Part shown: positions 10,295 through 62,684 of the stretch, one piece after another
Layout of the letters: every line of letters begins with the position of its first letter
How positions within the stretch are numbered: position 1 is the first letter of the stretch
Notes under the pieces: model-generated
The model's input: the letters and a program-made list of their open reading frames with translations, nothing else
Told to the model about the DNA's origin: nothing
Databases searched by the model: none
Origin: Podarcis tiliguerta
Lineage: Eukaryota
Direction: 5' to 3' (one strand)
Length of the DNA: 64,000 nucleotides
Assembly (NCBI GenBank): GCA_965153285.1
Contig: OZ229122.1
Made by a program: the position numbers and the translations under genes

Positions 10295-12017
10295 ATATAG
10301 GCCTTGGACATATGCAGAGCACTAGACACTACAAACTAGACAAATGAGCATCCACTGACGCAGCCTTCAGTAGGAAGGTGCTGCAAAGGGTGGTACAGCC
10401 ATAATGCCTCTAGTTAGCGAAGCGCAGGTAGTCCCAGCATAAAGGCTGTCCTCCAGGAGCCTCTGGGGAATGAAAGGAAATTCTTACCGTGAATTTCTAT
10501 TCCCAGAGACTCCTGGAGGACAGCACCCACCACTCTGGGAGAGTCACACATGGCTGGGGATATAACCAAACTCTTGAACTTAAAGTGGACATGAACGTCA
10601 CGAAAGATGCCAACCAAAGCGGGGTACAGCAAAGTACCTGCAATGTGGCAATGTATGGGGAGGGGTTCTTTCCTGCTTGATCAGCTGGTCTGGGGACCAT
10701 GGAATGACTCCTCCCCCAGCAAGGATCTTTATGTGACCCTGCCTGTCCAGTCAGAGGAGAGGAGCCATCCCAGCATAAAGGCTGTCCTCCAGGAGTCTCT
10801 GGGAATAGAAATTCACGGTAAGAATTTCCTTTCGTTCCCTCTTCCATGGTAAACCATAAGTCCCATTCAGGCATTATTAGAACTAGTCTCTGGGCCACAA
10901 GAGGTTGTCGGTACCATTCTGAATGCTAAATGAGACAGTTTGCTCAATAGCCTACAAGTACACTGACAAAATGTTTAGCCATTTTTATTGAGTTTCCACT
11001 GAAAAATACCAAACATCTTACTTGCATAAAAAATAGCCTAAAATACATTTCACACATTTTGTCCATAAAGATTCCAAGGGCGCCAATTGATCAGAAGAGA
11101 TCCAGAATATATTGATATCATTTGAGAGGTATCACTGATATTTTGAAGATAGTAAGTGATGGGGGGGGGGGAAATCTTTTTTGCATTTAACTTGAGCATA
11201 AAAATGGTCTTGGAGGCACAGCTTTAGTCTGTCCTCTGCATATATTACACCAAAACTATCTATATCTAAATATGGTTATTTAAATTGGGCATTTAAACAA
11301 AGTACTTTATTTCTTAAATAGCCTATAACCTTAGTAAAATTTTTAGCCATGACTGACATGGATAATGAGTAGCGTGCGTACATGCATACGCGCACACACA
11401 CACACGTGTAAAACTCAAGGCAACAAAATAATTTAATGTAGCACTGGTGTTCAGTTTGGTTAATCATGTAAAGTTGGACTCAGTCCAGCAAATTTACCTT
11501 CTCCACACAAAGGAAGTGGGGATGGTCTTGAATAGCTGGGATTGAACAATTCTTGTCTATGTTTCTGTGCGATCACACACAGAGCAACCTTTTGAGAAAA
11601 CCATAGCTTACAGGAAGAGTTTAGTTCATAGCCCAGCACCTAATTGAAGCTTATTTATACATGGGCCCTGTTTAGCGATCCTAATGCACAGCTGTAGGTG
11701 CCACTCTTGCATTCCGCATGAAGGGTGGGGGCTGGGTGCCATTTGCAACGCCTGCAACTCTTCTCTTCCCTCCACCCACAGCCCCACAACAGGCAACCAG
11801 CAGCGGGAGACAGCGCTAATCACCTGTGTGAAAATGTAGCTATAACGGTAGGAGTGAGATGTTTCCACCCACTAGTGCTCAATACAGAGTTCCTTATGGG
11901 TAGGCTCACATTGGGAAGACTGATCTGCAGATGGAAGCCCTTTTCAAGATAAGAATTGCTGTTTGGAGTACAGAAAACCTGCAAGTTCACAAATTTCTCT
12001 TTTTGAAATGCAAAGTA

Positions 12018-29083: not shown

Positions 29084-29227
29084 NNNNNNNNNNNNNNNNN
29101 NNNNNNNNNNNNNNNNNNNNNNNNNNNNNNNNNNNNNNNNNNNNNNNNNNNNNNNNNNNNNNNNNNNNNNNNNNNNNNNNNNNNNNNNNNNNNNNNNNNN
29201 NNNNNNNNNNNNNNNNNNNNNNNNNNN
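29084..29227. other. Assembly gap (144 N)
   Basis: Run of N. Confidence 1.
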
Positions 29228-31609: not shown

Positions 31610-33280
31610 TCACAGAATTAATGAGTTGGGAGTCACCTACTAGTCCAACCCGCTATCAGTGCAGGATATGCAATCCAAGATTGCATTATTATTATTATTT
31701 TACTTGTCCATATGACTGGGTTGCCGAAGCCTGACAGATGCCTGTTGAATCTCTGTTCAAATATTTTAAAACTTTCAGGAGAGGTAACCACCTCATGCAG
31801 CAGTTTCACTGTCAAGCAGCTCTTACCTTTAAGTTCCTTCTAATCTTTAGCCAAAATCTACTTCCCTGCAATTTCCACCTATTATATTCTATTCCTATGC
31901 AAAAGCCTTTGACTGTGTCGACCACAGCAAACTATGACAAGTTCTTAAAGAAATGGGAGTGCCTGATCACCTCATTTGTCTCCTGAGAAATCTCTATGTG
32001 GGACAAGAAGCTACAGTTAGAACTGGATATGGAACAACGGATTGGTTCAAAATTGGGAAAGGAGTACGACAAGGCTGCATACTGTCTCCCTGCTTTTTTA
32101 ACTTATATGCAGAATTCATCATGCAAAAGGCTGAGCTGGATGGATCCCAAGCCAGAATTAAGATTGCCGGAAGAAATATCAATAACCTCAGATGACGCAA
32201 CCTTGTTGGCAGAAAGTGAGGAGGAATCAAAGAACCTTTTAATGAGGGTGAAAGAGGAGAGCGCAAAATATGGTCTGAAGCTCAACATCAAAAAAAATGA
32301 AGATCATGGCCACTGGTCCCATCACCTCCTGGCAAATAGAAGGGGAAGAAATAGAGGCAGTGAGAGATTTTACTTTCTTGGGCTCCATGATCACTGCAGA
32401 TGGTGACAGCAGTCACGAAATTAAAAGACGCCTGCATCTTGGGAGAAAAGCAATGACAAACCTAGACAGCATCTTAAAAAGCAGAGACCTTGCCAACAAA
32501 GGTCTGTATAGTTAAAGCTATGGTTTTCCTAGTAGTGATATATGGAAGTGAGAGCTGGACCATAAAGAAGGCTGATTGCCGAAGAATTGATGCTTTTGAA
32601 TTCTGGTGCTGGAGGAAACTCTTGAGAGTCCCATGGACTGCAAGAAGATCAAACCTATCCATTCTGAAGGAAATCAGCCCTGAGTGCTCACTGGAAGGAC
32701 AGATCGTGAAGCTGAGGCTCCAATACTTTGGCTACCTCATAAGAAGAGGAGACTCCCTGGGAAAGACCCTGATGTTGGGAAAGATGGAGGGCACACAAGG
32801 AGAAGGGGACGACAGAGGATGAGATGGTTGGACAGTGTTCTTGAAGCTGCCAGCATGAGTTTGACCATACTGCGGGAGGCAGTGGAAGACAGGAGTGCCT
32901 GGCATGCTCTGGTCCACGGGATCACGAAGAGTCGGACACAACTAAACAATAACAACATTATATTCCTGTCCTTTGAAGCACCAGAAAACAAATATTTTCA
33001 ATCTTCTGTTGTAACAGCCCTTGAGAGATTTGAGGACTGCTATCATGTTCCTCCTTAAATTTCTCTTGTCCATGCTAAACATGTCAGCTGTTTCTCATAG
33101 GACTTGGTTTCCAGCCCCCCACCCCCATCCTGATCACCCTTCTCTGGACCAGCTCCAGTTGGGTAAATGTCCTTAAAATGTGGCATCCAAAACTAGACAC
33201 AGTACTCCAGAAGCAACCCAACTAGCATAAATGGAGTGCAACTATTATGATTTGGCCACAATCTGCCCATTAATGCAGTA
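31610..33280 (-). mobile_element. Old CR1 3' fragment split by BovB (CR1 parts ~31610-31880 and ~32960-33280)
   Basis: Degenerate colinear similarity to 6810-7400 on both sides of the BovB. Confidence 0.65.
31895..32957 (+). mobile_element. BovB (RTE) LINE 3' ~1 kb, frameshifted
   Basis: GVRQGCILSP.FNLYAE, IAGRNINNLR, IDAFE.WCWR.LLRVPWTARRSN; (CAA)-type tail. Confidence 0.95.
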
Positions 33281-33427: not shown

Positions 33428-34049
33428 AACTTTTTCAAGTCATGCTTTAGCTTATGATTAGCTAAGACACACACTGTCTTCATTTACATAATGCTAAATC
33501 AAGGTGTGATATGTTTAAACACAAGCTCTAGCATTCCTCTATTTGTCCACCCAAGAGCAACACAACCATGAACTTGGCTTAGCCGGATATCCAAATCAGT
33601 GTTTGTGGTTTGTTTCTCTCCAAACCACAATGTAAAGCCAAGGTTTGTTCTTGGGTTTCTGAGACTTGTGGGTATAGGGTGGTATAAAAATTTAATAAAT
33701 CACCTTCCTTTCTTGTTATTGCTTCAAATACAGTATAGTGCTTTCTTAGCATTTCTAACAAGAATCAGGTCTTGGTAGGTTTATTGTACCCATTCTTTGT
33801 TATCTGGCCCACCACTTTCAATTATATACTGCTCTGAGATTTTCAGATGAAGGGTGGTATATTAATTTAATAAATCAGAAATATATTGCTTTTTAAGCCT
33901 TGACTTCTTGAGAGATCCTCCTCTCTTTTGAAATAGTTTGCACCCACACTTCCACCATTTCACTGTTCAGAATCCCCAAGTCCCCGTTTTCTCTCTCATG
34001 GCATCCTCCTCACCATCACGAACAACTGCGGGAGTATTTTTGGGAGGAA

Positions 34050-34900
34050 GTTGGGGAAATACATATGGGAGCAGTTACGTTTTGCACTAAACAAACGCGA
34101 GTAAATGCCTGCGCGCTCGCCTCCTATAGTTATAAATGCCAGAAACCTTAATTCGAAAACAAAAAAAGATGGCAATCTCAGGATCGGGGCGCACGATGCG
34201 CACTTTCTGCGCATTTTGAGGAGAACCTGATACGCACGGAGCGCGCGTCAACAGGAGGGCTGGCTTCGCCCGAAGCCCCTCTGGGCCAGATGGAAGCGCC
34301 TCCCCCGCCGGCCCCTCACCTGAGGCGAGGCCCTGCAGCACCGAGAGCGCCACGACCAGCAGCGGCGCGCAGAGGAAGGTGCGAGGCGGCGGCGCGAGCC
34401 TCCTCCGCCGCAGGCGCCGCATTTCCCCCGCCGGAAAAGGCGCCTCCTGCTGCCGCTCGCGCTCTTTCCCAGCCGGGGCGGGAGCGCAGCGAGGTCGTTA
34501 ACCGCCGGCCTTCGACTCCCTCGTCACAATGGCCGCGGGAGGCGCCGCCGAAGGAGAAGAACCACCGCCGCGCGCCTCGGGGTTCCGCGCAGCCGCGGAG
34601 CATTGGCGGACTTTCCGCCTCGCGCCCCGCCCTCTTTCCGAGCGCCGCTGTTTCCCACGCGCCACGACTTTAAGCGCGCGCTGGCCTTGGATTGGTCGGC
34701 TCCGGCGGGGGGGGGGCAGGGCGGCAGAGGCGCCTCAGAAGGTTCCGCTCGGGCCTCCGGCGGCTGCGCCCCAAGCAAATGCCTTGCGGTCTTCTTGAAG
34801 GGCAGCATATCAACTGAATGGAGGAGGATATTGGGGGGGGGGACCCCTGGATCCAGCAAGTGTTAAAATATAAGCCGGGTGATGGCCTGGGTGGTGGGCC
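34050..34900. promoter_or_regulatory. CpG island / ZPBP promoter, possibly bidirectional with SPATA48
   Basis: Dense CpG, GC boxes and ATTGG (CCAAT) at ~34602 and ~34691; lies between divergent genes. Confidence 0.75.
34320..34422 (-). CDS. ZPBP: ZPBP coding exon 1 (signal peptide: MRRLRRRRLAPPPRTFLCAPLLVVALSVLQGLAS)
   Basis: ATG at 34422 inside the CpG island; Arg-rich then hydrophobic N-terminus like ZPBP; G|GTGAG donor, phase 1, compatible with the next exon. Confidence 0.8.
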
Positions 34901-36577
34901 GTTAAGGGAAGAAAGGAAGGGCTCTTTGCAGATACCCTCCCTCAACTGTTAGTTAAAAAGGACAAAAAGAAGACGGAAGGGCAGAGGAGAGTGATGTGAA
35001 CAGCAGGCTAGGAAACCGTAGAGCAAGAAGTGAGGGAACCACGAATCCCAGGCTGCAGCCATGGGGGAAGCAAGACTCTTGGGGGTGTTAATGCTGTCAG
35101 CCCCTCCATCGTAGACTCAGGTTGTATACAGCGGACACAAGTTGTGAACGTGATCTGTGTGGGAGGCACATTCGCAATGTGCTGCATCTGCACACACGCA
35201 GGTTGCGATCCAGTGCTTCTGTGCACCCGCAACGCGCGATTTAGCACTTCTGCTCATGCACGAGCGCCGAAACCCAAAAGTAACCTGTTCCGGTACTTCC
35301 AGGTTTGGCACGGTGCACAACCCGAAAACGCACAACCTGAACCGTCCGAGGTATGACTGTATATGCATAAATAAGTCTTATGTCATAAAGACACCACCGT
35401 GTCTGCTGTACAAAAGGAAACACAAACCCTGGATGAGTGCCTGGAACCTCGCACTGCTCAGAGATTTGGAGTGGCGTGCAACACGGGGGCTAGAAGTGGG
35501 GTCCGTGTTTTCTGGAGGAGGGCCTGTGAGCAAAGTGTGCCTGAATCAAGATGGAGGGAGGAATAGCAACACTCCTTGAGCAGCTTGAGACAATAGAGCA
35601 ACGGCCGAGCCAGTGGTTTGAGCAAATGACCCTGTGGCAGAGCCAGCATTTTGGTAGAGTGTAGCAGCTGCAAGCAGAGTGTGTAAGAAGCCTTCTTGGA
35701 AAGAAGGAATTCATTAGCTTTTAAACAATCATCCATGTAACCTTATTTTGCTAAGTGCCTGAGCTTAAAAGCCTGCCTGAAAGTTAAGTCCTCTGTCCTG
35801 CAAGACTTTCTCTTTCATCGAGATATGCCAGGGGCAACTGAGGGCTCACCCACACTTCCACTGGTCCTGTGTTCTCCACCACTTGTGCCGCCGCCGCTTT
35901 CCCCCAGAAAACCCACTGTTTACTGTTGAAACACAGCAAACATCAATCGGGTTTCCTGCATATGATGTTTGCTCCGATTCAGCAGTAAGCAGCAGGTTTT
36001 CCCAGGGGAAATGATGCAGTGAGCAGTAAACCTCTCAGACCAGTGCCTAGAAAGCACAGGCAAATGGAGGTGTGGGCAAGCAGGAGCAGGGGACTTTGGA
36101 CCCTTTGGATGATGCTGAGCTGTGTCAGCCGTCCGCCTCAGCCTGTGTGGCCAATGACCAGGGATGAGTTGCAGTCCCACAGTGGGGTGGGTAGGGGACA
36201 ACAAAAGTTCCCCATGCCCAGATACTGCTCTAATAGTCGCTGCATTCACTCACCACCTAACAGTTCTGCGATCCAGAATCGGAAATGGAATGTCGGTTTA
36301 GATACTGAACAGTGCCATAAAAACAACTTATCAGTCAAATGTTAATCGCCGGGATGTTATAAACAGATGTACCAGTCATCTGCTGTCATATTATATTCTT
36401 TTTTAATTGCCTTGTTTATATGTTAATTAAATAAAATTTATTATCTTTTTTAAAAGAGAAGGTCCTGCTTGCAGGCTTCCATAGACATCTGGTTGGCCAC
36501 TGAAAATAGGATGCTGAACTAGGTGGGCCTTTGGCCTGATCCATTAGATCTCTTCTTATATTATTAAAAAGAGTACA

Positions 36578-36803: not shown

Positions 36804-38747
36804 TACAATATATTTTTTTAAGCACACTTGGGTTTTTTTGAGGGGCGGTGCAAGTAATATTAATCTTTTAGCTTTTTTATTAAATCTGTTATCAAACTTA
36901 TCAGGTAAAAGATGTGTTTCACAGTTGATTTGGGAGCAGTATAAAGGAATTTGGTCAGCTTTTTTTTTTTAATTAAAAAAAATCATTTTATAAGATTGTG
37001 TAGGAAAGTGGAATTGGAGAGGAAGAGGTGGATCCAGCAACAGAACACTGTAGTACTGTGGAATGTTCTTGTTTACTCTTCTAATCAGGTCTGCCCTGTC
37101 CTCTACTGTACTGTAATCCTTTACCCACCTTTTTCCAATTCATACCCCAAGAGTCAGTCACAACATCCTGTGGAGTGCGCTCAGTTATGCCTGGGCTCTT
37201 TTGGGGGATGGAAGGGGGTTCCTCCTTTAGAATATTGTCCTCTAAAGCTTCTTTGGACTTCTGCAAACCTTGACATTCCCTCCACATCCGCTGGTACCTT
37301 CCTCTTGTATGAGGATATTGTTGTTTTGGCGATGTAAGCATTGGTACTCGCATCTACAAGATGGACCTGCAACAAAATGTTGTTGTGTAGAGTGCTTCTG
37401 TTCAGGAGACTCTCTTCTCCCTAGTTTTCTGTCTACCCCACACACATTCAGCAGTCCATGCACACTGAACCAAAGTCTCATTGGGCTATTTTGAAGGGGT
37501 TCTGTTAGGATTTTTTCTAAAGTTTTTATTTTGTACTTCTGCAAATCTTGGGCTTCCCCAGCACCCGTGTGTGTGTGTGTGTGAGACCATTTTTTTTTAC
37601 TACGTAAGGATAGGCACTTGAAAAAATGAGTCTGTGAGTCTAGTATTAGCATACTAAATGTGGTGGTGGGTTAGAAAGAGGGAAAGCTTTGCAATTCATT
37701 TTTCATTTATCTTCACAGTAATCTTTTGAAAAGAGATAAACAAACATTCCCAAAGCACCAGAGGGCTCTAGTACACTTCCTTCGCTGACCTTATAAAAGG
37801 TGACCCCCAAACATTACCGCTCAGGAAGATGAGGAAGGCCAAACTCTAATATTGTTACAAAAGTCCCTCTTGTTACAAGCCTGCCCCTCTCTCTGCCAAG
37901 TGGTGGCGAGAGCCCATGGGGTCTGTGTCCCTTTGGAGAACAGAAGACACGGTGGAGACTGTCTGGCTTTAAGAAATATGGTTTATTCAGTCTGCATGGA
38001 GGAAGTCCAGATCTTATGGCATAGTCATTTCACGAGGTAGCAGCGCAGGCTGCCTGCAGCCAGCCTCCAAAGATGAATCTGCTCCTCTTCCCCCTTCTTC
38101 TTCCCAGAAACCCCTTGTCCTCCATCAGAGCAGTTACCCTGGCAACCTCCCAAATCCCCAGTCTCTGTTCACACCTGGTGGAAGGAGTTCCCTTGTATTG
38201 TTCTTGTTCCTCAATTATTCCTTGATCACTGTAGCTCAGGAATTCCTTTGCAGCTTGCATTCTCCCATCATATCACAAACAACCCAAATCCTAGCATTTA
38301 TTAATTTCTAGGGCTTACCCTAAATCTATAACACTATATAAGGTGATTATTTTGAACTTTGATGTTTGACAATCTAAATCTTTAATACATTTTAAAACAT
38401 TGCAGTAGGGAAGAAAAAAGCATATAAATTATTTGTGAAGCAGAGAAAACGATTGCTTCATTCATAGATCAGAAAGATCACTGCCTTTTCTCCTGGATCC
38501 AAATCCCTAAGAAATGCATCACTACAACTTCATTGTGTGCTCATGTTCTACTGTCACTAAGCAACAAAGAGACTCTTCTCATTTGACAAGAAGTGTTGAC
38601 TTCTCATTTGACAAGTGTTTTCTTCCATAAGTTGGAAAGGTTTTTGGTTGTGTCGGTGTGCTGTTAGTTTCCGTGTGAGTTCCTGGACAGGATTAGAAAA
38701 CAATCAAGACTCTAATATCTCTACTTGGAAACAATACAAAAATAATT

Positions 38748-39231
38748 ATGACTTCTGGAGTCACTGCAAGGCAGTTCAGCCACTTCAATTCTCACAAGAT
38801 GCATCAGAAGCAGCATGAAGGTCTCTTAAAGAGAATGTATATGCCTTTTGTGAGAGGACCTGAAGACAGACACTTTTTTACCAGTTTCCACGACAAATGC
38901 AGTAATGCTTTTCTCAAATCCAATCCATTCATTCGACCTGAAGATAAATCCTACCTTTTAGCTCCACATCGGGATGATCTGCCAATAATTAACCCTAGTT
39001 CAGGATTTGTGAGCCCAGGAGGTGCAGTTGAAGCTAACCAAATCATGTACAGCAAAAACAAGGAACCCCTGGGGAATGGTAAAGATGTGCAGCCTCCACC
39101 GTCGGCCCCCTTCCCACATACGACACACCAGCCTGCAAACAGAAGACTCTCGGTATTGGAAGAGATAAAGCAGGACCAGCAGTGGAACTCAAGAGCAGTG
39201 CCAGATATTTCTCTCAGGTCCAAACTTGGAG
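38748..39231 (+). CDS. SPATA48: SPATA48 (C7orf72) first coding exon
   Basis: ORF 38748..; LLKRMYMPFVRG, SGFVSPGG and WNSRAVPDISLRSKLGG resemble SPATA48; GT donor at 39232, phase 1. Confidence 0.9.
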
Positions 39232-41486
39232 GTACATGGTGCTATCTTTTACTGTTCTCATTGTATTCACTATATTGTCTGATGAAAGGACACAAGGTGC
39301 ATAAATGATGTCCCTTGAAGTGCCAAAATGCATGCTATGCAGAGTTTTATTTAACTTTCCCCCTAGTGAATGAAAAAGTTGCAGTGCTGAAGGAGAACAG
39401 GTGAGGGGAATGGGTTGTTTAACCTTTTCTCTGCTGACCATGGTTCTACTTAAGTTCAGTTGGCAGGGCGTTTGCAGGGGCAAAATCTGTTTCCTCCCTG
39501 CAGTACTGGGTTTATCAAATGTAGAGGGCGGACTTAACCCTCACTCAGACAGGGTTCTGGGTGCACCCTTTTGGTTTCTTCCATGCAGTATGAGTAAATG
39601 CTGTCATGCACTTCAAAGGGGGAAAGTGGAGTACTGCATTTGAGGACACTGTTCTATGGAGAGCAAATGCACGCATCCCTCTCCTGATCCTGAATAATCT
39701 CTCCTCCACTGACAGAGACAACAAGTTGTCGCTGCAATATACAGGCACATTTCCCACTCCCCACTCCTTCGTGATAGACTGCTTCTGTTGCTGCAATTTT
39801 TATTTCCTGATTTATTTTTATATTGTTTGATATTTTGTGGTTGCAAGCTACCTTGACTTATTTTATAAAGAAAGTAGGTAGAAATCTTAAGTTTTTAAAA
39901 CAAATAAATTTAAATATTGATAGGTGGTTTGTTAGCTATAACATAAGAATATATAAGATGAGATATGGCTTGCCTGTCCAAACAACTCAGATCATGTAAC
40001 TGTTTGCTAAAGTATACGTTGTGTTGTTCCAAAGGCTCACTAATCTAAAGCAGAAGAGAGCTGGTGGTTCATTTTCAATCTAAGAGGCTAAATTTAATTT
40101 CAAGTCCCACCTCTGCCATGGATTCATTATGTGGCCTTGGTTAAATCACCGCACTTCAGCCTCAGATCACATCCACACCACACATTGAAAGGACTCTGTC
40201 ATTGCTTCCCCCAAAGGATCATGGGAACTAGTTCAAGGTTCCAACAATGCTTAGCACCTGTTACAAACTACAGTTCCCAGGATTCTTTGTGGGAAGCTGA
40301 AGGGAGGGTATAAGAGTTCTTTAAATGTATGGTGTGGATGTAACCTATATCTGTGGGAGGGAAATAAAAAGGAACTATATGTACTTCATGGGAGAGTTTG
40401 AAGAACAAACACAGAAAAAACTGTAAAACATCAAATTTAAAATGTTATATAAATTATATTAAAAGGGGGAGCAGCAGTAAAGAAAATGGCACCCTATTGG
40501 GCCTGGTAAACATAAGCAATTGGCTCTCTGGGTCACAACCTCCAGCCTCCTGTCTGCTTCCTGACAGCAGCTCACTGTCTCTTTTGTCTCTAGATCCAGG
40601 GACGAAACTAGGCTTTATTTTAACCGGGCCAAAGACCCAGTTTGGCCCACCCACCCACTCACATTTGTGTACACACCCACCCACCCAGGCTGGGAGCTCA
40701 ATGGGGCTGCTTTAGAGGCTTCACCCAGGGCAAAAAAACCCAGCTCCACCCCCCCCCCCCCGGTTAAGGCACTGTCTAGCTCTCTAGATCCCAAACAAAC
40801 TTCCTTCTTAACCCCTTTTTTCTTCAACCCTGCACCCACTGCCCCATTTCCTTGGATCTTTATTCCTTGATGGCTCTTCCCGAACTCTGCCCACCATACC
40901 ATGTCTTCCTTTGTGTGCCCCCCCGTTTCCTGTCATGCAGCCCCTCCTGACATTATGCGTCTCCGCAGCTCACGCACATTATTAAGTGCTCATTTTGTCA
41001 AGCCCTTTGTTTCTCCTCCATCTGCCCTTCCTTCAGGTTCTTGCTTCTCAGTACCTGCTCTGCCCCTTCCTTCAATTACTCTGCCTCGTTGTTACCTGGC
41101 TCTTAGGTTCCCCAGCATCTTGGGACCACTTTCTCACTGTGTCTGCTAGCCACTGATTTCACTCTCTCTTTTGACCTATAGTGCTCCTTCAGGGTTTTCT
41201 GTGGTATTTTCTCAGCCAAACTCAAAATTCACTTCAACTCATTGAAGTGGACTGCGGCAACCATTCAGTTGTTGATATCATCCCTCATTAGAAAGTATGT
41301 TTGCAAGCATTTCATGGTATAACTTTAGTTTGGCAAATTACTGCCATAGACTGCATTGTTTCCACCACAGTCATCATAAAATCATTTAAGTTAGTTAACA
41401 TAGCAATATAAGAGTTATTTAACTTAGTTGTAATCTTTAATACTGTAGTAGGCTGCATAGAACAAGAAATTCAACATTTTTTTCAG

Positions 41487-41584
41487 GATGGACAAGTCCA
41501 GTAAAAGTTATACCTGCTCCACCTAAAGTCAAAGGAAATTTTTCACCTCATACATTTGCATTTCATGTGGACCCAGACATTAAG
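41487..41584 (+). CDS. SPATA48: SPATA48 coding exon 2 (GWTSPVKVIP...DPDIK)
   Basis: TTTTCAG acceptor, GTATTT donor, phase 1-0; GWTSP.KV motif. Confidence 0.9.
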
Positions 41585-42144
41585 GTATTTTTGTTTCCCG
41601 CTATTGATTTTGTTGTTGGTATAAACCTGGAACATATTTTCAAATTAATACTAGTCCAACAGGCATCTTAAATCTAGGGGGCCGAGGTGTCTTCAGCCCC
41701 CTCTCTATTTGTTAGAAAGGGGCTGGGCCTCCTCAGTGTTGAGAGGGTGTGTTGCAGCTTCAGCAGCTGGCTCCTCCAGAGTGCTCAGCCTCCTCCAGAC
41801 GATGTGCGGTTGTCTGTGTGGGGCGTCATTCACATGTGGCACGCGATGGGCCCCCTCAATTGTAGGGGCAACCTGGCACCTCTGTAGTCCAGCTACCTGC
41901 AATGCAGTATCTTTAGCCCAGCGTGGGGCTCGAATCCATGCTCCTGACATTAAGAGTCTCATGCTCTATTGAATAAGCCACTCTGAACATTTTAGGCTGC
42001 TCTAAAGGTGCAGGAGTAGGAAAAGGGGTGGCAATCTTATGCTTGTGTGCTTGAGACATTACACAGCTTGGAAAACTATTCAGTTAAAGGACTAATCCCT
42101 GCATTATCTTTTATGATTTCTCTTCATCATGGTTTCTTACGAAG

Positions 42145-42218
42145 TCAAGTGATCCGTCCTCTGAAGCCTTCAGAGATGAGAAAGCGCGGAAGTATATGTA
42201 TACCTCAATGGCTCAAAG
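42145..42218 (+). CDS. SPATA48: SPATA48 coding exon 3 (SSDPSSEAFRDEKARKYMYTSMAQR)
   Basis: AAG acceptor, AG|GTGAG donor, phase 0-2 links the flanking exons in frame. Confidence 0.8.
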
Positions 42219-43399
42219 GTGAGCTTCTGTTTCTGGTAAGGAAAGGATTCTTTAAACAGTTGGTGTTCACCTGGATGACAGGATGCTACGTAGGAGCTTT
42301 CGGTTGAACCCCTCCTTTAGGTCTCACTTTGTTTCTGTGATTGTAAGTTGTTTTAAACTGTTTTTAATATTACATTTCAATGATATAGCCTGCCCTGGAA
42401 CATTACAGTCAAGTGAGGGTAAATAATAATAATAATACAAGTTGACATGCTTCTTTTCCAAAGATTAGCCATCAGATAGGGGAGAGCTTGTGAAGGGTTT
42501 TTTATTTAAAAAAAAATTCATGGAAGAACATTCAGTCATATGTATCCCCACTTGTAATCTGAAATGCTACAGCTGAGAAATTTAGGGAAATGCTTCTTCA
42601 GCTCCCACTTCCAAGCTCTCTCCTACCTGATATATCTCAATATATCAATATATCTCAACTGAACTGAAGAAGGCATCCTGTTTCCCTTCCTTTCCCCCAA
42701 TGTTGTGCCCCACTTTCCTCCCCCCCCCTATTACTTTTCTTGCCACCACTGCCACATTGCCAACAATAGCACTCGTAGTTTCTCCAGTGCCTCAGTAACG
42801 CAGGACGGGATCTTTCCTCAGAGCCAACCATTCTGGATGGGGTGGGCAAGGGAAGGCTGTTTAGACTTAGAGGGGTGGAATAAAATAGCCTTTTCTGCTG
42901 CAGTAAACTCTGCCAGCACCCGCACCCTTCCTCAGAGCAACGTAGGGAGAAGAAGAGAAAGGGGCAGCAGAAACCATTCCTTCCACAGGTAGGGGGGTGA
43001 ACAGGTGACTGTGCCCGCAGCAGGGAGAGATGGGGGGCCAGGGGGCATGCCAGTTCACCCTTCCCCTTTGCCCACTGCTTGAGGCAATTGTCTCATTCCA
43101 CTGCATGAGTGGGCTGACTCTGCCTGCACATAAGAAATTGGAGGTCAGGGACAATAATTTTTGCCGAAATTTCTTCATGACATGCTAGTTTCCTGTGTGG
43201 AAGGATTTGGGTTTTGCTTTTGAGTGCGAGACCTGCAGTCTGGAGTGATGCAAGCCAGACACAGGTTTACCACCTCGGTGAATATTAGGCCTAAAACAAA
43301 GATCTGTTGGGATATTTTAGAGCCATTCAGGTACACATGGCCATGTCATTGATCTGAAGGTATAAGATGATGGTTATTGTTTATTAAATTTGTTAGACA

Positions 43400-46743: not shown

Positions 46744-46811
46744 GTTGTTGGAAGCCTCTGGGACAGATTTCAAAGAAGAGCCTTCATATCACCGGACAAG
46801 CCAATTAATTT
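46744..46811 (+). CDS. SPATA48: SPATA48 coding exon 5 ([23 protein letters not shown])
   Basis: CAG/GTGAG sites; LWDRFQ.R.F..P.KPINF motif. Confidence 0.93.
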
Positions 46812-48417: not shown

Positions 48418-48418
48418 T

Positions 48419-48449
<31 letters not shown>

Positions 48450-48488
48450 CGCGCATGTGCGCACGCACATGCACATTCACATGCACAC
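48418..48488. repeat. (TG)n(CG)n alternating purine-pyrimidine tract
   Basis: Directly visible. Confidence 0.9.
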
Positions 48489-48792
48489 TTTAAGTGAAGT
48501 CTGGTGATCCAGGGCAAGCTGGTGGTGCAAAAGGCACCAGGTGGCAAGGCTAGAATCTGCAGGACCCAGCCGGTCAGGCAATGGTATCACCCTAAGTGTT
48601 GGAAACCCAGAATTAAAGTTTTAACTACCTACCAAGACTGAACTAGGACCCTGCGTCCACTATGTGCTCTTAAAAATATACATGCCATTGTAAATTGTCT
48701 GAAAGTTGTCACATCTGATAACATACCAAATATTGATTGTACATTAGTAGGGAATAAGTTAACCAATTTAATGTGCCTTTCATCTTTAACAG

Positions 48793-48834
48793 TGTTAGTC
48801 CTTCCTCTCGAACTCAACATCTCCCTTTATACAC
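48793..48834 (+). CDS. SPATA48: SPATA48 coding exon 6, 42 bp (VSPSSRTQHLPLYT)
   Basis: CAG/GTAAGT sites, phase 2-2; VS.SSR...PLYT motif. Confidence 0.9.
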
Positions 48835-48937
48835 GTAAGTAAAAGTTGTTATGTGAAGATATATCTTTTCTCTTAAGTAGGGAATTTGTTCGTGCAAAAA
48901 GAGACAAAGCCACGCAGTCTGTTTGCATAAGTGCTCC

Positions 48938-48999
48938 TTGGTCCTATGGATGCCGTTGACTCCTGTCTTCTGATTTACAATGGCATCCATAGATCAAGG
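48938..48999 (+). ncRNA. Candidate intronic pre-miRNA hairpin (unnamed)
   Basis: 30-bp stem, 19-nt loop, basal UG at -14, CNNC at +17; see findings. Confidence 0.5.
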
Positions 49000-49709
49000 A
49001 GCACTTAAGCCTGAGCCACAGAGAAACAAAGCAAGAGCAGTAGGCAACGGATCACAGAAAGAGATTCCAAAAGTGAGGTGGAAATTCAACAATATGAGGA
49101 GTAATGTCATGAATCTGAGCTGAGGAGATAGCAGGACTCTGCACCAGAAGTAAGCCCAGTTGAGCTTGATGGGTCTACTCCCAGGTAAGTGTAGGAGTGC
49201 AGTCTTCTATAATGAGAAAATGGATGTTGTGTGAGTTCATAATATTAGAATTCAGAATCACCAGATAAATTAATTGGCAGGAGGACAGAAGAAAAATACA
49301 TGTATTTATTTAAAGCATTTTTAACCCACTCTACAACCAGAAATAAGGTGGTCAGACACGAAAGAATGCAGGGCTCTTGCACTTTTAATGGCGGTTTAGG
49401 GGAGAAAATTTCAGCAGCCATAGCTTGTTATTACATGTATAGCTACTGAAATTTCTTCTACACAAACATGCATCTTTTGCATCTAGTCACCCTAGCCATA
49501 AAATGTTTTCAGAATGGCTTACAAATGTCATTGATAAGAAAATCCTTGTCTTTAGACGTCCTGTCTCAAAATACATGACAGAAAGAAAAGGGATTGGGAA
49601 GGAGGAGGAAAAACCAAAATCGGGACTCATCAAAACTTCCTTTTCCGCTGCACTTCCGAGGCACAGGTCCATGCTTTAAAACTCCATGTCCGAGCAGTTA
49701 TTGTGTTTT

Positions 49710-49855
49710 GTTTTTGTCGTGGCACTTTCCCTGGGAAAACCTGCATTTTACAATTGAATTAGAGCAACCAGCAATCTGCAGAAAACCCCATTGGCATTTG
49801 CTCTGATTCAGTAGTAAAACGTGGGTTTTCCTGGGGAAAGTGCCAGGGCGAAAAG
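49710..49855. mobile_element. Palindromic MITE-like element (related copy ~35890-36025)
   Basis: TGGCACTTTCCCTGGGAAAACC...GGTTTTCCTGGGGAAAGTGCCA long imperfect inverted repeat. Confidence 0.6.
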
Positions 49856-52068
49856 ACACAGAGTTAAAGCCTGGACCTGTGCCTAGAATGCGGCACAAAA
49901 GGAAGTCTGGATGAGCCCTTTAGCACCATTTCTTAAGTTACAGAATGTAATGACCAGCTGAAATGGAAAGATTTAAAGGAAGAGATAAGCCAAATGTTGC
50001 TGATCTTCCAGTGGAGTCCATGAGGAAACACAGTACATAATTAGCATATTAAATTAATTGCCACAAAATATACAGTATGTTGTGGCCACTAGATTAGCCT
50101 GATATTTAAAGGACTGGACAGATTATAGAGATTTTTTTTTTTACTAAATATCAGCCATGACAGTTAAACAGAACTTTCCCATTCAAAGGCAGTGTGCCTA
50201 TTTATGCTGGAGATAAACAATGTTGACTTCATATGAGCTTCCTATCTAACTGGTCACTTCTAGACTCACTGGATGTTTGGTCAAAATTCATAGAGTTTGG
50301 TCAAAATTTGTAGTTTCTTATACTCGTATATGCTTCTTCTCAGTTTATGGCCGTTCATGGCAGAAAAATCAACTTTGTACCACCCCTCCACCATTTTAAT
50401 ATACATATTTTCCCTACATTGAGATTATCCCAATGTATAGAATTGATTTTAGAAGATTGTCAGTTGAAATGAACTCACTCTCATGCTTGACTTCATATTA
50501 AGAGGGCTGATAAATAGAATAGGCATGCAATTCAGGCTATTACCTGCTGCAAAACCTATCCTATGGCTGTGTGATTTCATAAATCATCTATGAGCAGCTT
50601 GGAAACTGACTTGAGAAGTTGCTCTAGCAATTGTGGTCCTTGTGGACAGTTGAACAGCCAGCTGGGACAAGTCAGACCTATGACAAAATGTTGCAGTGAA
50701 TCTTCCCCTTGAAGCACCATATTGTAAGGCAGAAGGCAGAAGGGGCTCCAGCAGACCACCCCCACCCTTCTCTCCTCTCTCCTTTTCATTGTTCTTTTCC
50801 AAGTAACACTCAATGGGCTATGGCTACTGAGCATACTCAGTTCTCATTGGGCTATGCAGGAGAGGTCCCCACATCTACCGGTGGTTTTTAGTATATCTAC
50901 TCCCCGGTTTCTCAGTGTCCCTTTTTGGCTCCAGTCCTGTTGGCACTTGCCACATGAGTTTTGCCATTCTAAGCAAGAGGCAAAAAACAGGAGGTGGTCT
51001 TTTTTTTTGGGGGGGGGGGTGTTTCACTTGGAGGTGAGGCCAGGCAGTTCTAAATACCAGCACTGAATAGGTTCAAAATGTGCAATAAGGAAGCCCCACT
51101 GGAGGATTTAAGAGGGTCTTATTAACTCCTACATCCCCGGGCAGGGTCCTTGTGTTTAAGAAATTGTGTCTCCAAAGCATAGTGTCGAGTCAGACATGAG
51201 AGAAGAGATGCTTGTCAAAAGGGATAGGAACAAGGCACTACAGAAATGGCGATAAGCGCCTTTTGTGGACCATTCTGGATATACCAAGGCATTTTGTCTC
51301 CAAAATGCAGCAGAAGGTCAAAGATGATACTGTGCTCCTTCCTCTGCACCCGCTGTCCATGTTAGGATGCAAGTGTGTATTAGGGCTTGGCAAGAAACTC
51401 CATCCATGTCTGGTTATTGAGGCCAACTAACATTTATTTGCCCCAGGCCTGCACAACTTGTGATCCAGCAAGCCAAGCACAGTCCGCCAGCCACATCCAC
51501 TGCTTTCCCAGTAGCTTGAGAAACCTCCTGTTTTTTGCCACTTGCTTGGAATAGCAAAAGCATGAGGGGGATTATCAAGCATGTAGCATATCACAACATG
51601 AGAGTAATGGGCTACATTCAGCATTGTGGATCAGAAATCATGGCTTCTGAGACATTGCTCTGCTATTTCCTAGTACTATTACTATGGTTGGTTTTTTGTG
51701 TACTGGATATAGAAATATGGAAGAAACTAATGAATCGTTACAAAAAAATGAGCTATACTAGTTTCTTGGGGCTGAATACAAAAGGCAGTGGAAGCAATGA
51801 TGACTCCATTTCTTTCTCACATTATTTACAGTTTCCCCAAATTAGCTTATTCCACCTACGTGGTAAAACGTTGTCATCCATTTTTTCCTACAAGCACACT
51901 GCCTAGTTTTATGTGTATTTTGGTACGTGACTGCACAAATCTCTGTGTATGTTTTTGTGCACCTTTTAAATAAATAACGAAAAACTTGGAGCTTCAGTGG
52001 CCTCAGCCAGCTGTGTTATAAATAATACATATTTGCCTCTTGATTCATTCCCCTTTTCATCCAAACAG

Positions 52069-52176
52069 GGGCTGTGTTGGTGCAGAGAATCCTGATGACC
52101 TGGACAATCCCTATGTAGATGTAATTGTTCACAGCAGAGTTCGAACTGCAGAACCACAATATGTGAAATCTTCCTA
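52069..52176 (+). CDS. SPATA48: SPATA48 coding exon 7 (GCVGAENPDDLDNPYVD...VKSS)
   Basis: 108 bp, phase 2-2, CAG/GTATGT sites; DD.DNP motif. Confidence 0.9.
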
Positions 52177-56441: not shown

Positions 56442-57225
56442 ATTCCCCGGTGAGATTTTGGCTGACTGGCAGTGTCCCCCAGCATGGATTGTTATGGATG
56501 AATGGAATCTGGTGCATTCCTTGTTGTCATGGCCAGTGCTCCTGCCAAGGCTGTGGTCTTGCTATGGAAGTGCAGAATGGGCAGGGCCAGGGATACAATG
56601 CTTTTCATGTGCCCTAAATGGCTTGTAACAGCAGTTGGGAGATATTGCTTTTAAGAATAGTCCTCATGATGACCTAAATGTCAGAGAAACCCCAAAATAT
56701 AAATAGCAGTAGAAACCCTTCTTCCCACCTATGGTGCGGTTTGACGTTTTATCTGGATATAATACTTATATCTGCTTATGCTGTATATCTCAAAATAGTA
56801 TTGTTTTTTTGTAGTAAAAGTTCAAAACATAGGTGCTGCTGTCTACATTTACCCTAGTAGAGTTTCTGGTTTCCCCCCAATTTATTTTCTATTTATATTT
56901 TTCCTTAGTTATATAGTTATATTCTTCCAGTACTAAGCATACCTGAAGCTACTGAATCCAATGATCTTAATTTATTCAAATCCAGTGCTTTTCACTGGGT
57001 CTACCATAATACCCAACTTTTCCTCTAACTTTAAACAACTGCTGCTCTCAATCTCATGCCTAGTTTTCAAATTAGCAGGGTCTCTTTTTTTAGCTTGATT
57101 GGTGCAACTTGTCATGAGCGTGATGAGAAGCTGCATCTGCAAAATTCTCTTTTTACACAACAATTTAAGGCACGGAAACCCTGTCGTCTTCTGCACCTGC
57201 ATGCTGCTACCTCGATACCCTAGAT

Positions 57226-57360
57226 CAGGCATAGACAAACATGGCCCTCCAGATGTTTTGGGACAACAACGCTATCATCCCTAGCTAACAGGACCAGTGG
57301 TCAGGGATGATGGGAGTTGTAGTCCCAAAACATCTGGAGGGCCGAGTTTGCCTATGCCTG
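57226..57360. mobile_element. hAT MITE
   Basis: CAGGCATAG...CTATGCCTG TIRs; perfect 8-bp TSD CCCTAGAT. Confidence 0.93.
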
Positions 57361-58996
57361 CCCTAGATACGCTCCCAATGAATGGATTTGTAGAGGAGTT
57401 GCTGGACTACGTTCCCATCATCACTCATCACTGATCAGTGATCAAGCTGGGCTGAGGCTGATGGGCATTGGAGTTCAGAAACATCTGCAAGGCCACACAG
57501 TAAGCAGAAACCTCTATTTTACAGGAAGTTGTATCTGGTAATCTGAACCCCTCTGTTCCTTATATATTAAACAGAAAAAACATACTATTAATTTTTCATT
57601 GGCAAACAACAAATGATTCACACACATAAACATAATTGCACAGACTTGATATTTAGCACATTTCTCAGCTTCATTTAGCTGTATCTTATCCTTTTTTCTG
57701 CTCCCCCTCCCCACAATGCTGCACTGAGGTTACAGCACTCAAGAAACTTTGTTCTGCAGGTGTTCTAAGTCAATGGGGGAGAAGCGTCACTAAAGATGGG
57801 GCTTTCCTGTGGAACATTCATGGGAAGGAAGAGGGAGGGCCATGCAACTCTTAGCCAAATGTCATTTCAACAACTACAAATTCCTTTTCATTACAAGTGC
57901 TGCTAACACATCATTGCTTTGTGTGACAATGCTCAGTGCTAGCAAATCTCAAGTGCCCTGCTCTCTAGGCCTGGTGCATGCATGCATATCATTAAATTTA
58001 TCTATGTTGCACCGTGGCAGGGCTGGCCCAAGACATTTTGACCCCCAAGGCAAACCACAAAATGGCGCCCCCCTCTCTGTCAGGGCAGAAGGGGTGAGTG
58101 AAGATGTACATCAGGAACAAGGACAAAATAAATATCTCTATTGGGATCTGCTGCCCAAGTGGATCCTGCCACTGGAGGCAGTTGCCTCACCTTGCCTCAT
58201 GGGTGGGCCTGCATTGCATCACAGTACACTTGAAGACTAGCTAAACCTGAAGTTAAAATTTCCATGCTGGGGATACAAAACAAGTTTCCCAGCCTCTCAT
58301 GTGATTGGATGCTGATTATTGAGCAATGTATCACAATAGCAATCAGGAATTTATCACATCATAAATTGAGAAATCCTAGATATGGGAAGGGGGAAGAGAG
58401 ACACAAGTCCACTTAGCCTTCCTGGTGTGGCAGCGTTGCAGGTGAGTGACGCCTCCCCAGCCTGGATCCAACGTGGTCTTTGGTTGCTGGGCCTGCCCAG
58501 CTGGCAGGTTCCCTGTTGGCTTGTCACTACCCCAACTTCTGCCATTTGAGCTAGAAAAGGCAACCGTTTACACTAGACAGAGCTTTGGGTCTTAATTTGC
58601 AAAATTCACTAGCTCTGGCAAACGGGGCTTGCTCACCACTGTAACCCGGACAACAATCTAGTAGTGATTATCAACCTGCTAGGTATTTGCCCATCAGTTT
58701 GGGAGACAGAGATGAATTTGATGCTTCAATTTTAGTGGCAGTTTCCAATGCTTTCGATGCCATCAAAACAATTATTAATTGTCTGTATTTTTATCTATTT
58801 CTCATTATGTATTTATATATTATCTTTCTCCCCACCCCTGTCTCCTGTTGTTGTTTTGATAACTCTCTACTGTATTTTATGTTTATGGCCAAATAAACTG
58901 AACCTGAAATTTATTTTTTGCCCACAGACTAGACAATTTGTATGCACAAATTCATTCTACATGTATGTAGTTCTGTTGCTTGAATCTAATTTGTAC

Positions 58997-60469: not shown

Positions 60470-60613
<144 letters not shown>

Positions 60614-62560: not shown

Positions 62561-62684
62561 TTACCTGGCTAAGCATGGGCAACCATCTGAATTTCCGCAT
62601 CTGGGGCCTTTGTCACAGACCCTTGTACCCACTGAACCTCAAAATCCTTTCAATAAGAAGGAGAAAAAAAGAATTGAACTTTGA
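62561..62684 (+). CDS. SPATA48: SPATA48 last coding exon (YLAKHG...PQNPFNKKEKKRIEL*)
   Basis: CAG acceptor, NPFNKK motif, TGA 62682-62684; the nine exons sum to 1245 nt in frame. Confidence 0.92.

What the first reader, a model, noticed from the sequence alone, without database searches (positions are those of the whole stretch)
48924..49019. Candidate new intronic microRNA in SPATA48 intron 6 with correctly placed Microprocessor motifs
Seen: 48928-48958 (TAAGTGCTCCTTGGTCCTATGGATGCCGTTG) pairs with 48978-49007 over 30 bp with one bulged C and a 19-nt loop. Both non-Watson-Crick positions are G.U wobbles on the + strand (SPATA48 sense) but C.A mismatches on the other strand. Placing the Drosha cut at 48938/48999 (62-nt pre-miRNA, 2-nt 3' overhang) puts UG exactly at -14/-13 (48924-48925) and CCAC (CNNC) at +17 (49016-49019); the loop also has UGU. 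Established: these are the canonical pri-miRNA determinants. Inference: a testis-co-expressed miRNA ~95 nt downstream of exon 6, with 5p ~UUGGUCCUAUGGAUGCCGUUGA and 3p ~CAAUGGCAUCCAUAGAUCAAGG. I do not recognise the family. The hairpin begins and ends in TA, so it may derive from a mini-MITE.
Basis: partly seen in the sequence, partly recalled or inferred. Interest (0 to 1): 0.8.

Follow-up and report, generated by a model that had tools for sequence, protein, structure and literature searches.

The report
Young intronic hairpin, microRNA status unproven
A real, single-copy RNA hairpin of about 33 base pairs sits in an intron of the lizard sperm gene SPATA48 and is transcribed with it, but nothing yet shows that it is cut into a microRNA, and most young hairpins of this kind are not.

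Summary
The hairpin is real. 48928-48958 pairs with 48978-49007 over 30 bp, with one bulged C and a 19-nt loop. Two more pairs at 48925/26-49009/10 make a stem of 33-34 bp. The + strand folds at -55.6 kcal/mol (z -7.6).

SPATA48 lies on the + strand. A 42-nt exon 6 (48793-48834) is supported by spliced RNA contigs of a sister species, and the hairpin starts 94 nt into intron 6. An unspliced RNA contig runs through it.

It is not a dispersed MITE. In the contig sets of three related organisms it lies at single-contig depth, while nearby repeats attract dozens of contigs. A degenerate third copy (48661-48695, 27/35) lies on the other side of exon 6. Together these point to a local inverted duplication.

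UG at -14/-13 and CNNC at +17 are present (joint chance 1-3%). However, CNNC is deleted in organism C, organism B has a stem-breaking change at the proposed cut site, the loop UGU is misplaced, and the bulge lies in a bulge-depleted zone. No constraint is detectable.

No small-RNA data and no distant orthologues could be reached. Published base rate: 0.9% of such genic hairpins are annotated miRNAs. My estimate that it is a genuine miRNA is about 10%.

The parts
48925..48958 (+). Left (5') arm of the hairpin, L. It holds the proposed 5p from about 48938 and the bulged C at 48944.
   Evidence: 32 of 33 aligned bases match the reverse complement of the right arm apart from 2 transitions; 1 indel
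48959..48977 (+). 19-nt apical loop with UGU at 48964-66, which is 26-28 nt from the proposed cut and so not at the canonical 22 nt
48978..49010 (+). Right (3') arm, R. Probably the older arm, because its similarity to the upstream copy U runs 5 nt on into the loop.
48924..48925 (+). Basal UG at -14/-13 from a cut at 48938
   Evidence: position rule from PMC6004053
49016..49019 (+). CCAC (CNNC) at +17 from a 3' cut after 48999. Present in organisms A and B. Removed in organism C by deletions at 49013 and 49015-17.
48661..48695 (+). U: a degenerate third copy in the orientation of the left arm, in intron 5. It is 27/35 identical to the reverse complement of 48973-49007, including a 14-nt exact run.
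   Evidence: the best background match in 128 kb is 21/35; U-R duplex -30.7 kcal/mol
48793..48834 (+). SPATA48 coding exon 6 (42 nt), with AG at 48791-92 and GT at 48835-36
   Evidence: an RNA contig of exactly 48793-48834 at depth 75 against 10-15 in the introns; the loose end after 48834 matches 52069-52098
48835..52068 (+). Intron 6 (3,234 nt), the host of the hairpin
52069..52176 (+). SPATA48 coding exon 7 (108 nt)
   Evidence: splice target; Pfam PF15073 positions 21-54, E 1.8e-4. The end at 52176 is inferred from the GT and the reading frame.
46745..46811 (+). SPATA48 coding exon 5

Best explanation
The hairpin is a young, single-locus inverted duplication in intron 6 of SPATA48. Most likely one arm (the left, 48925-48958) was made as a reverse-complement copy of the neighbouring older segment (the right arm, 48978-49010). 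A replication template switch or a similar local event could do this. It happened before organisms A, B and C split.

Since then the two arms have picked up two transitions and one indel at roughly the neutral rate. The locus is transcribed passively as part of the SPATA48 pre-mRNA. There it must fold into a 33-34 bp stem with a 19-nt loop.

By geometry the RNA is a possible Microprocessor substrate, a 'proto-miRNA'. Nothing shows that it is processed or that selection maintains it. The default expectation is that it has no function.

Shown: the structure, single-copy status, presence in three related organisms, transcription through it, and the gene model around it. Inferred: the duplication mechanism, which arm is older, and neutrality.
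For: - The structure is strong and far beyond chance.
- It is single-copy. In the contig sets of X1, X5 and X12 the bins 48910-49032 stay at one-contig depth (60.7, 8.5, 102.6). Repeats 100-700 nt downstream attract many contigs at 80-90% likeness, with summed depth up to 4272. One X1 contig spans 48500-49067 unbroken.
- The window holds no other copy.
- A third, degenerate copy U sits 277 nt from R across the conserved exon 6. It matches 27/35 against a background maximum of 21/35. The match continues 5 nt past the stem on R's side, so R is older than L. A single transposon insertion cannot explain the U-R pair, because exon 6 and exon 7 belong to the conserved SPATA48 coding sequence.
- The arms differ by about 6%, against about 2% between the organisms. 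That fits an origin before their split followed by neutral decay. One wobble is a CpG>TpG change.
- No constraint is visible. There are 2 changes in 86 nt summed over B and C, against about 3.4 expected. B breaks a stem pair at 48938, and C deletes the CNNC.
- The RNA run X19 has a 380-nt unspliced contig over 48805-49184. Its repeat bins rise only about 3-fold, against about 60-fold in the DNA runs, so the intron signal is not genomic DNA.
- Published precedent and base rate: template switches create perfect hairpins in one step, and only 0.9% (57/6,054) of genic ones of miRNA size are annotated miRNAs (PMC10710096).
Against: - No outgroup without the hairpin was available, so the one-step inverted duplication and its direction are inferred from one locus.
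- The mismatches between U and R cluster in the middle 12 nt, which simple neutral decay of a 35-nt copy does not predict.
- UG and CNNC in the right register have a joint chance of only 1-3%, and the stem length is near the Microprocessor optimum. Processing is therefore more likely here than for an average hairpin.
- With only about 2% divergence among the three organisms, the test for constraint has almost no power.
- Logan contigs and the tool's filters can hide copies. Copies below 80% likeness were not looked for.
Confidence: 0.6

Rival explanations
1. It is a genuine, lineage-restricted intronic microRNA. Drosha/DGCR8 cut the SPATA48 intron at about 48938/48999, Dicer removes the loop, and one arm is loaded into Argonaute in cells that express SPATA48. 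Its origin could still be the same local inverted duplication.
For: - The stem of 33-34 bp lies within the 36 +/- 3 nt optimum, and the loop is 10 nt or more.
- UG is at -14/-13 and CNNC at +17, with a joint chance of 1.1-3.3%.
- It lies in sense orientation in a transcribed intron, and an unspliced RNA contig crosses it. In PMC10710096, 81 of 99 intragenic template-switch miRNAs are sense-intronic.
- It is single-copy.
Against: - No small-RNA evidence of any kind exists.
- The base rate is 0.9%. The motifs raise this perhaps 4-13 fold.
- CNNC is deleted in organism C, and the first base of the proposed 5p is changed to a C.A mismatch in organism B.
- The UGU is not at the apical position.
- The bulge lies in the bulge-depleted zone.
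- No Rfam family comes near its gathering score. The best is 32.7 against 93 bits, and similar scores appear on both strands, which means generic hairpin shape only.
- No depletion of substitutions is seen.
Confidence: 0.1
2. It is a relic of a very short palindromic DNA transposon, a mini-MITE of the Tc1/mariner type that inserted at a TA. The two arms are its terminal inverted repeats, and U is a fragment of another copy of the same family.
For: - The palindrome begins and ends in TA.
- From my memory only, and not tested, the termini (A)AGTGCT resemble the CAGTGCT ends of Tc1-type elements.
- A related segment U lies nearby.
- Other hairpins of the window are repeats. The arm of 10445-10524 recurs at 1549, and 49566-49700 is high-copy.
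Against: - No second copy at 80% likeness or more appears in three whole-genome contig sets, although the same call detected many 45-55-nt repeat matches below 90% identity.
- Arms that are 94% alike imply a recent insertion, whose sister copies should then be about 94% alike and easy to see.
- The pairing runs 2 bp beyond the TA.
- None of the three organisms has an empty site.
- The window and the metagenome scan give no further copies.
Confidence: 0.12
3. It is a splicing-control structure. U in intron 5 and R in intron 6 can pair and loop out the 42-nt exon 6, while the much stronger local L-R pairing competes with that. The balance between the two would tune inclusion of exon 6.
For: - U and R flank exon 6. 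They lie 98 nt upstream of the acceptor and 139 nt downstream of the donor.
- The predicted U-R duplex is -30.7 kcal/mol, against -53.0 for L-R.
- U is a clear outlier against background.
- Public reptile gene models skip exons 6 and 7. This could be poor annotation or real skipping.
Against: - L-R is adjacent and far more stable, so U-R should rarely form.
- In the fold of the whole region, R pairs with L and not with U.
- No exon-skipping joint was seen.
- No covariation data exist.
- The idea rests on one locus.
Confidence: 0.05

Closest known systems
Hairpins created by template-switch mutations, some of which became miRNAs (Monttinen, Frilander and Loytynoja 2023, PMC10710096)
   Same: Single-copy and near-perfect inverted repeat, with source and copy a few nucleotides apart. 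Size of a pri-miRNA stem. [quoted passage not shown] A few point changes acquired afterwards.
   Different: That test is an ancestral or outgroup sequence without the hairpin, whose change is explained by one switch-and-return event. There is also no small-RNA evidence. A third, older copy across an exon is not part of the published pattern.
MITE-derived miRNAs such as the mir-548 family from Made1 (named from my own knowledge, not tested here)
   Same: Short, near-perfect palindrome with TA at both ends that folds into a miRNA-like hairpin.
   Different: Those hairpins belong to families of many dispersed copies. This one is single-copy in three genomes' contig sets.
Canonical intronic miRNAs processed by Drosha/DGCR8
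   Same: Stem length, loop size, basal UG, CNNC at +17, and sense-intronic position.
   Different: Far fewer mismatches than conserved miRNAs. The bulge lies in a disfavoured zone. The apical UGU is misplaced. The motifs are not kept among close relatives. There is no family match and no reads.
Mirtrons
   Same: Intronic hairpin.
   Different: The hairpin ends do not coincide with splice sites. It starts 94 nt after the donor, and the intron is 3.2 kb long.

Membership tests
Animal microRNA gene (MirGeneDB-type criteria) | Reads of 20-26 nt from both arms with uniform 5' ends | not testable with these tools
   No small-RNA run was offered. All the runs are Logan contigs, which cannot hold 22-nt RNAs.
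Animal microRNA gene (MirGeneDB-type criteria) | 2-nt 3' overhangs between the 5p and 3p reads (the Drosha and Dicer signatures) | not testable with these tools
   Needs small-RNA reads.
Animal microRNA gene (MirGeneDB-type criteria) | At least 16 paired bases between the arms and a stem near 35 bp with a loop of 8-10 nt or more | tested here: met
   30 bp plus 2 bp, 33-34 stem positions, 19-nt loop. Optimum 36 +/- 3 nt.
Animal microRNA gene (MirGeneDB-type criteria) | Microprocessor sequence motifs in register (UG -14/-13, CNNC about +17, apical UGU at 22 nt) | tested here: inconclusive
   UG and CNNC are met in the window. CNNC is deleted in organism C. The UGU is at +26-28. Motifs help processing but do not define a miRNA.
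Animal microRNA gene (MirGeneDB-type criteria) | Conservation of the arms beyond the neutral rate, or compensatory changes | tested here: inconclusive
   Only relatives at about 2% divergence were available. 2 changes against 3.4 expected. One change breaks a pair.
Animal microRNA gene (MirGeneDB-type criteria) | Not a member of a repeat family | tested here: met
   Single-contig depth in three organisms, with a positive control from nearby repeats.
Any described miRNA family (Rfam 15) | Score at or above the family's gathering threshold | tested here: not met
   Best is mir-549 at 32.7 bits against 93. The hits fall on both strands and come from structure alone.
MITE / short non-autonomous DNA transposon | Many dispersed copies of similar sequence | tested here: not met
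   None at 80% likeness or more in X1, X5 or X12. None in the window.
MITE / short non-autonomous DNA transposon | Terminal inverted repeats flanked by a target-site duplication | tested here: inconclusive
   TA lies at both ends, but TA is itself palindromic and the pairing continues 2 bp beyond it.
MITE / short non-autonomous DNA transposon | Presence/absence polymorphism with an empty site in relatives | tested here: not met
   The hairpin is present in organisms A, B and C, and no joint skips it.
Template-switch (TSM) generated hairpin | An outgroup or ancestor lacks the inverted copy, and one switch-and-return event explains the change | not testable with these tools
All three reachable organisms already carry the hairpin.
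Template-switch (TSM) generated hairpin | Reverse-complement copy lying next to its source, at a single locus | tested here: met
   The arms are 19 nt apart, 94% alike and single-copy.
Mirtron | Hairpin ends defined by the splice sites | tested here: not met
   The donor is at 48835 and the hairpin starts at 48925-28. The acceptor is at 52068.

The most novel reading that the evidence does not exclude
The hairpin is a newborn microRNA gene. It would have been created in one step by a local inverted duplication inside a sperm-specific gene of one lizard lineage, and it would already be processed by Drosha and Dicer in the germ line. An older sister copy on the other side of a 42-nt exon would record how the locus was built. 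That would be a dated, mechanism-resolved case of de novo miRNA birth outside mammals.
Probability: 0.1. Interest if true: 0.45.

Novelty: new member of a known kind. Interest (0 to 1): 0.25.

Why it matters
If it were processed, it would be one more lineage-specific intronic miRNA. It would also be a tidy non-mammalian example of miRNA birth from a local inverted duplication, which is useful but not surprising given PMC10710096.

As it stands, it mainly shows that a hairpin with a near-ideal Microprocessor shape and two correctly placed motifs can occur at a locus with no sign of selection. This window alone holds several comparable hairpins.

The check also gave a small annotation gain. SPATA48 exons 6 and 7 are real and are absent from the four public reptile models compared.

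Tried and rejected
Deep conservation and the outgroup test for a template switch could therefore not be run.
- The look-up of sequencing runs returned no small-RNA run and only Logan contigs. Read stacks, RNA ends and strand could not be examined.
- Rfam over 3 kb gave nothing on the hairpin. Over the hairpin alone it gave only generic, two-stranded, sub-threshold hairpin matches. The 9-nt identity with mir-549 is at chance level.
- Pfam on exon 1 gave nothing. The host gene was identified with the search for homologous proteins instead.
- A metagenome scan for the arm gave 0 hits.
- A literature search found no SPATA48 intronic miRNA.
- The strand argument from G.U wobbles was rejected. Its chance is 0.25, one wobble is a CpG decay, and the change in organism B goes the other way.
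- I noticed seed resemblances: a miR-133-like seed if the 5p began at 48937, and a 6-mer shared with miR-183. I dismissed both as coincidence.
- No transposon library (Dfam or Repbase) is on hand, so the Tc1-like terminus is only a recollection.
- The exons were searched one by one by reference. For that reason the 15-residue translation of exon 6 alone could not be scored against Pfam.
The N run at 29084-29227 was left alone.

Full report
**1. The observation**

- RNAfold pairs 48928-48943 with 48992-49007 and 48945-48958 with 48978-48991. That is 30 bp with C48944 bulged and a 19-nt loop (48959-48977).
- Two more pairs follow beyond an A.A mismatch: 48925/49010 and 48926/49009.
- The + strand folds at -55.6 kcal/mol (z -7.6; none of 200 dinucleotide shuffles is as good). 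The - strand folds at -49.8 (z -5.9).
- The two non-Watson-Crick pairs are G48941.U48994 and G48955.U48981. Both are G.U on + and C.A on -.
- UG (48924-25), CCAC (49016-19) and UGU (48964-66) are present.

**2. The gene around it**

- The ORF 38697-39305 finds SPATA48/C7orf72/SPMIP7 of squamates. The best hit is Varanus komodoensis at 66% identity, E 1.6e-59.
- tblastn of four reptile models places exons on the + strand at 38745-39233, 41486-41584, 42142-42219, 45244-about 45390, about 46745-46811, 60505-60613 and 62565-62681.
- Laying the contigs of run X19 (organism B) settles it. One contig of exactly 42 nt covers 48793-48834 at depth 75. The bin total is 123, against 10-15 in the flanking introns.
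- A loose end after 48834, where the genome reads GT, continues with 30 letters. These match 52069-52098 with one mismatch, right after an AG.
- The translation of 52070-52174 hits Pfam PF15073 (SPATA48) at profile positions 21-54. The next two exons hit positions 57-89 and 95-127.
- The reading frame runs through exon 5 (ends TT), exon 6 (42 nt), exon 7 (52069-52176, 108 nt) and exon 8. I inferred this.

X19 also holds a 380-nt contig over 48805-49184. This is unspliced RNA running through the hairpin. In X19 the repeat-rich bins rise only about 3-fold over single-copy bins, against about 60-fold in the DNA runs. The intron signal is therefore transcript, not contaminating DNA. The tissue of X19 is not known to me.

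**3. Is it a transposon?**

The same call is the copy-number test. At 80% likeness or more, the contig sets of organisms A (X1), B (X5) and C (X12) give one contig over 48910-49032, with depths 60.7, 8.5 and 102.6. The stretches 49115-49196, 49279-49360 and 49566-49700 draw dozens of contigs, most below 90% identity and only 45-55 nt long. That shows the method would have seen copies of an 80-nt element. An X1 contig crosses 48500-49067 without a break.

The window has no other copy, and a metagenome scan has none. Arms that are 94% alike imply a recent event, so sister copies of a MITE burst would be similar and visible. The mini-MITE idea is therefore disfavoured. Copies below 80% identity were not excluded.

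**4. A third copy, and the likely origin**

- 48661-48695 (U, in intron 5, in the orientation of the left arm) is 27/35 identical to the reverse complement of 48973-49007. The match has a 14-nt exact run that continues 5 nt past the stem into the loop side of the right arm.
- The best such match anywhere else in 128 kb of both strands is 21/35.
- U and the right arm R therefore form an older inverted pair that brackets exon 6. Exons 6 and 7 belong to the conserved coding sequence, so one transposon insertion cannot have brought both.
- The left arm L matches R only over the stem, and nearly perfectly.
- The simplest history is that R was there first and L was made as a reverse-complement copy 19 nt away. 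This is the product expected of a replication template switch (PMC10710096 and its predecessor).
- L and R differ by about 6% (2 transitions, 1 indel), against about 2% between the organisms (23-24 differences in about 1,200 nt). That fits an origin before the A/B/C split followed by neutral decay. One wobble is a CpG>TpG change in R.

This history is inference.

**5. Is it a microRNA?**

*For:*
- The stem of 33-34 positions lies in the 36 +/- 3 nt optimum, and the loop is above 10 nt.
- With the cut 13 nt from the basal junction (48938/48999), UG is at -14/-13 and CNNC at +17. These are the published positions.
- That combination occurs at 1.1% of positions in this window, or 3.3% if the cut may slide by one.
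- The hairpin is single-copy, sense-intronic and transcribed.

*Against:*
- There are no small-RNA data at all.
- The UGU is 26-28 nt from the cut rather than 22.
- The bulged C lies 17-20 nt from the base, in a bulge-depleted zone.
- Organism C deletes 49013 and 49015-17. That removes the CNNC and lengthens the basal stem (-60.4 kcal/mol).
- Organism B changes 48938 T>C, turning the first pair of the proposed 5p into C.A (-53.2).
- Substitutions are not depleted: 2 in 86 nt over B and C, against about 3.4 expected. This test has little power.
- Rfam gives only generic hairpin matches on both strands, far below threshold. The best is 32.7 bits against 93.
- The wobble strand argument is worth a chance of 0.25 and is cancelled by the change in B.
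- Hairpins of this strength are common here. It ranks about 9th in the window, and 57241-57340 and 10441-10540 are stronger. The latter is a repeat.

*Estimate:* in primates, only 0.9% (57/6,054) of genic template-switch hairpins of miRNA size are annotated miRNAs. The two motifs are worth a likelihood ratio of perhaps 4-13. That uses the 24% UG frequency and, from my own knowledge of Auyeung et al. 2013, roughly 60% for CNNC. The result is about 4-10%. I put a genuine miRNA at about 0.1.

**6. Other readings**

U-R pairing (-30.7 kcal/mol) could loop out the 42-nt exon and compete with L-R (-53.0). But L-R is local and much stronger, and no exon-skipping joint was seen. I give this about 0.05.

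**7. Verdict**

This is a real, single-copy, transcribed hairpin of recent local origin in SPATA48 intron 6. It is a plausible raw material for a miRNA but not shown to be one, and on base rates it is probably not one.
- Novelty: a new member of a known kind (a lineage-specific intronic hairpin, or proto-miRNA locus).
- Interest: low to moderate.
- Decisive data: testis small-RNA reads and the orthologous intron from other squamate families.

Noticed in passing
window 48793-48834 and 52069-52176: SPATA48 exons 6 (42 nt) and 7 (108 nt) have RNA and Pfam support. They are absent from the four public reptile models compared. The Sphenodon model joins exon 5 directly to exon 8, the Varanus and Anolis models stop at exon 5, and the Phrynosoma model reads exon 5 in another frame.
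   Followed up: partly
window 48661-48695: A degenerate third copy of the hairpin arm lies in intron 5 and is inverted relative to the right arm, so the two bracket exon 6. Its mismatches cluster in the central 12 nt while both ends are nearly perfect. Simple neutral decay does not explain this pattern.
   Followed up: partly
window 48418-48490: A (TG)n(CG)n microsatellite gives spurious sub-threshold Rfam hits to mir-297, mir-466 and others on both strands.
   Followed up: yes
window 57220-57366 and 10445-10524 (also 1549-1576): Two stronger foldback hairpins: 51-nt arms at 88% complementarity, and 31-nt arms at 87%. The arm of the second recurs at 1549 on the other strand, so it belongs to a repeat family. 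They serve as a local background for candidate miRNA hairpins.
   Followed up: partly
window 49566-49860: A high-copy repeat, with summed contig depth up to about 4,000 in the DNA runs. It contains a 57-nt inverted repeat (49711-49767 / 49798-49854), and a related inverted repeat lies at 35898-36010. This is probably a foldback or MITE-like family.
   Followed up: no
window 49370-49397 and 48623: Indel differences among the relatives. Organism B lacks 28 nt at 49370, and organism C carries a 20-nt insertion after 48623.
   Followed up: no
window 31900-33060: Long open frames with reverse-transcriptase-like and RTE/BovB-like C-terminal motifs suggest a LINE fragment upstream of SPATA48. The naming is from memory and was not tested.
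   Followed up: no
window 34000-34900: A GC-rich stretch (GC 0.57 in 34001-36000) about 4 kb upstream of the first coding exon may be the CpG-island promoter or a 5' UTR exon of SPATA48 or of a neighbouring gene.
   Followed up: no
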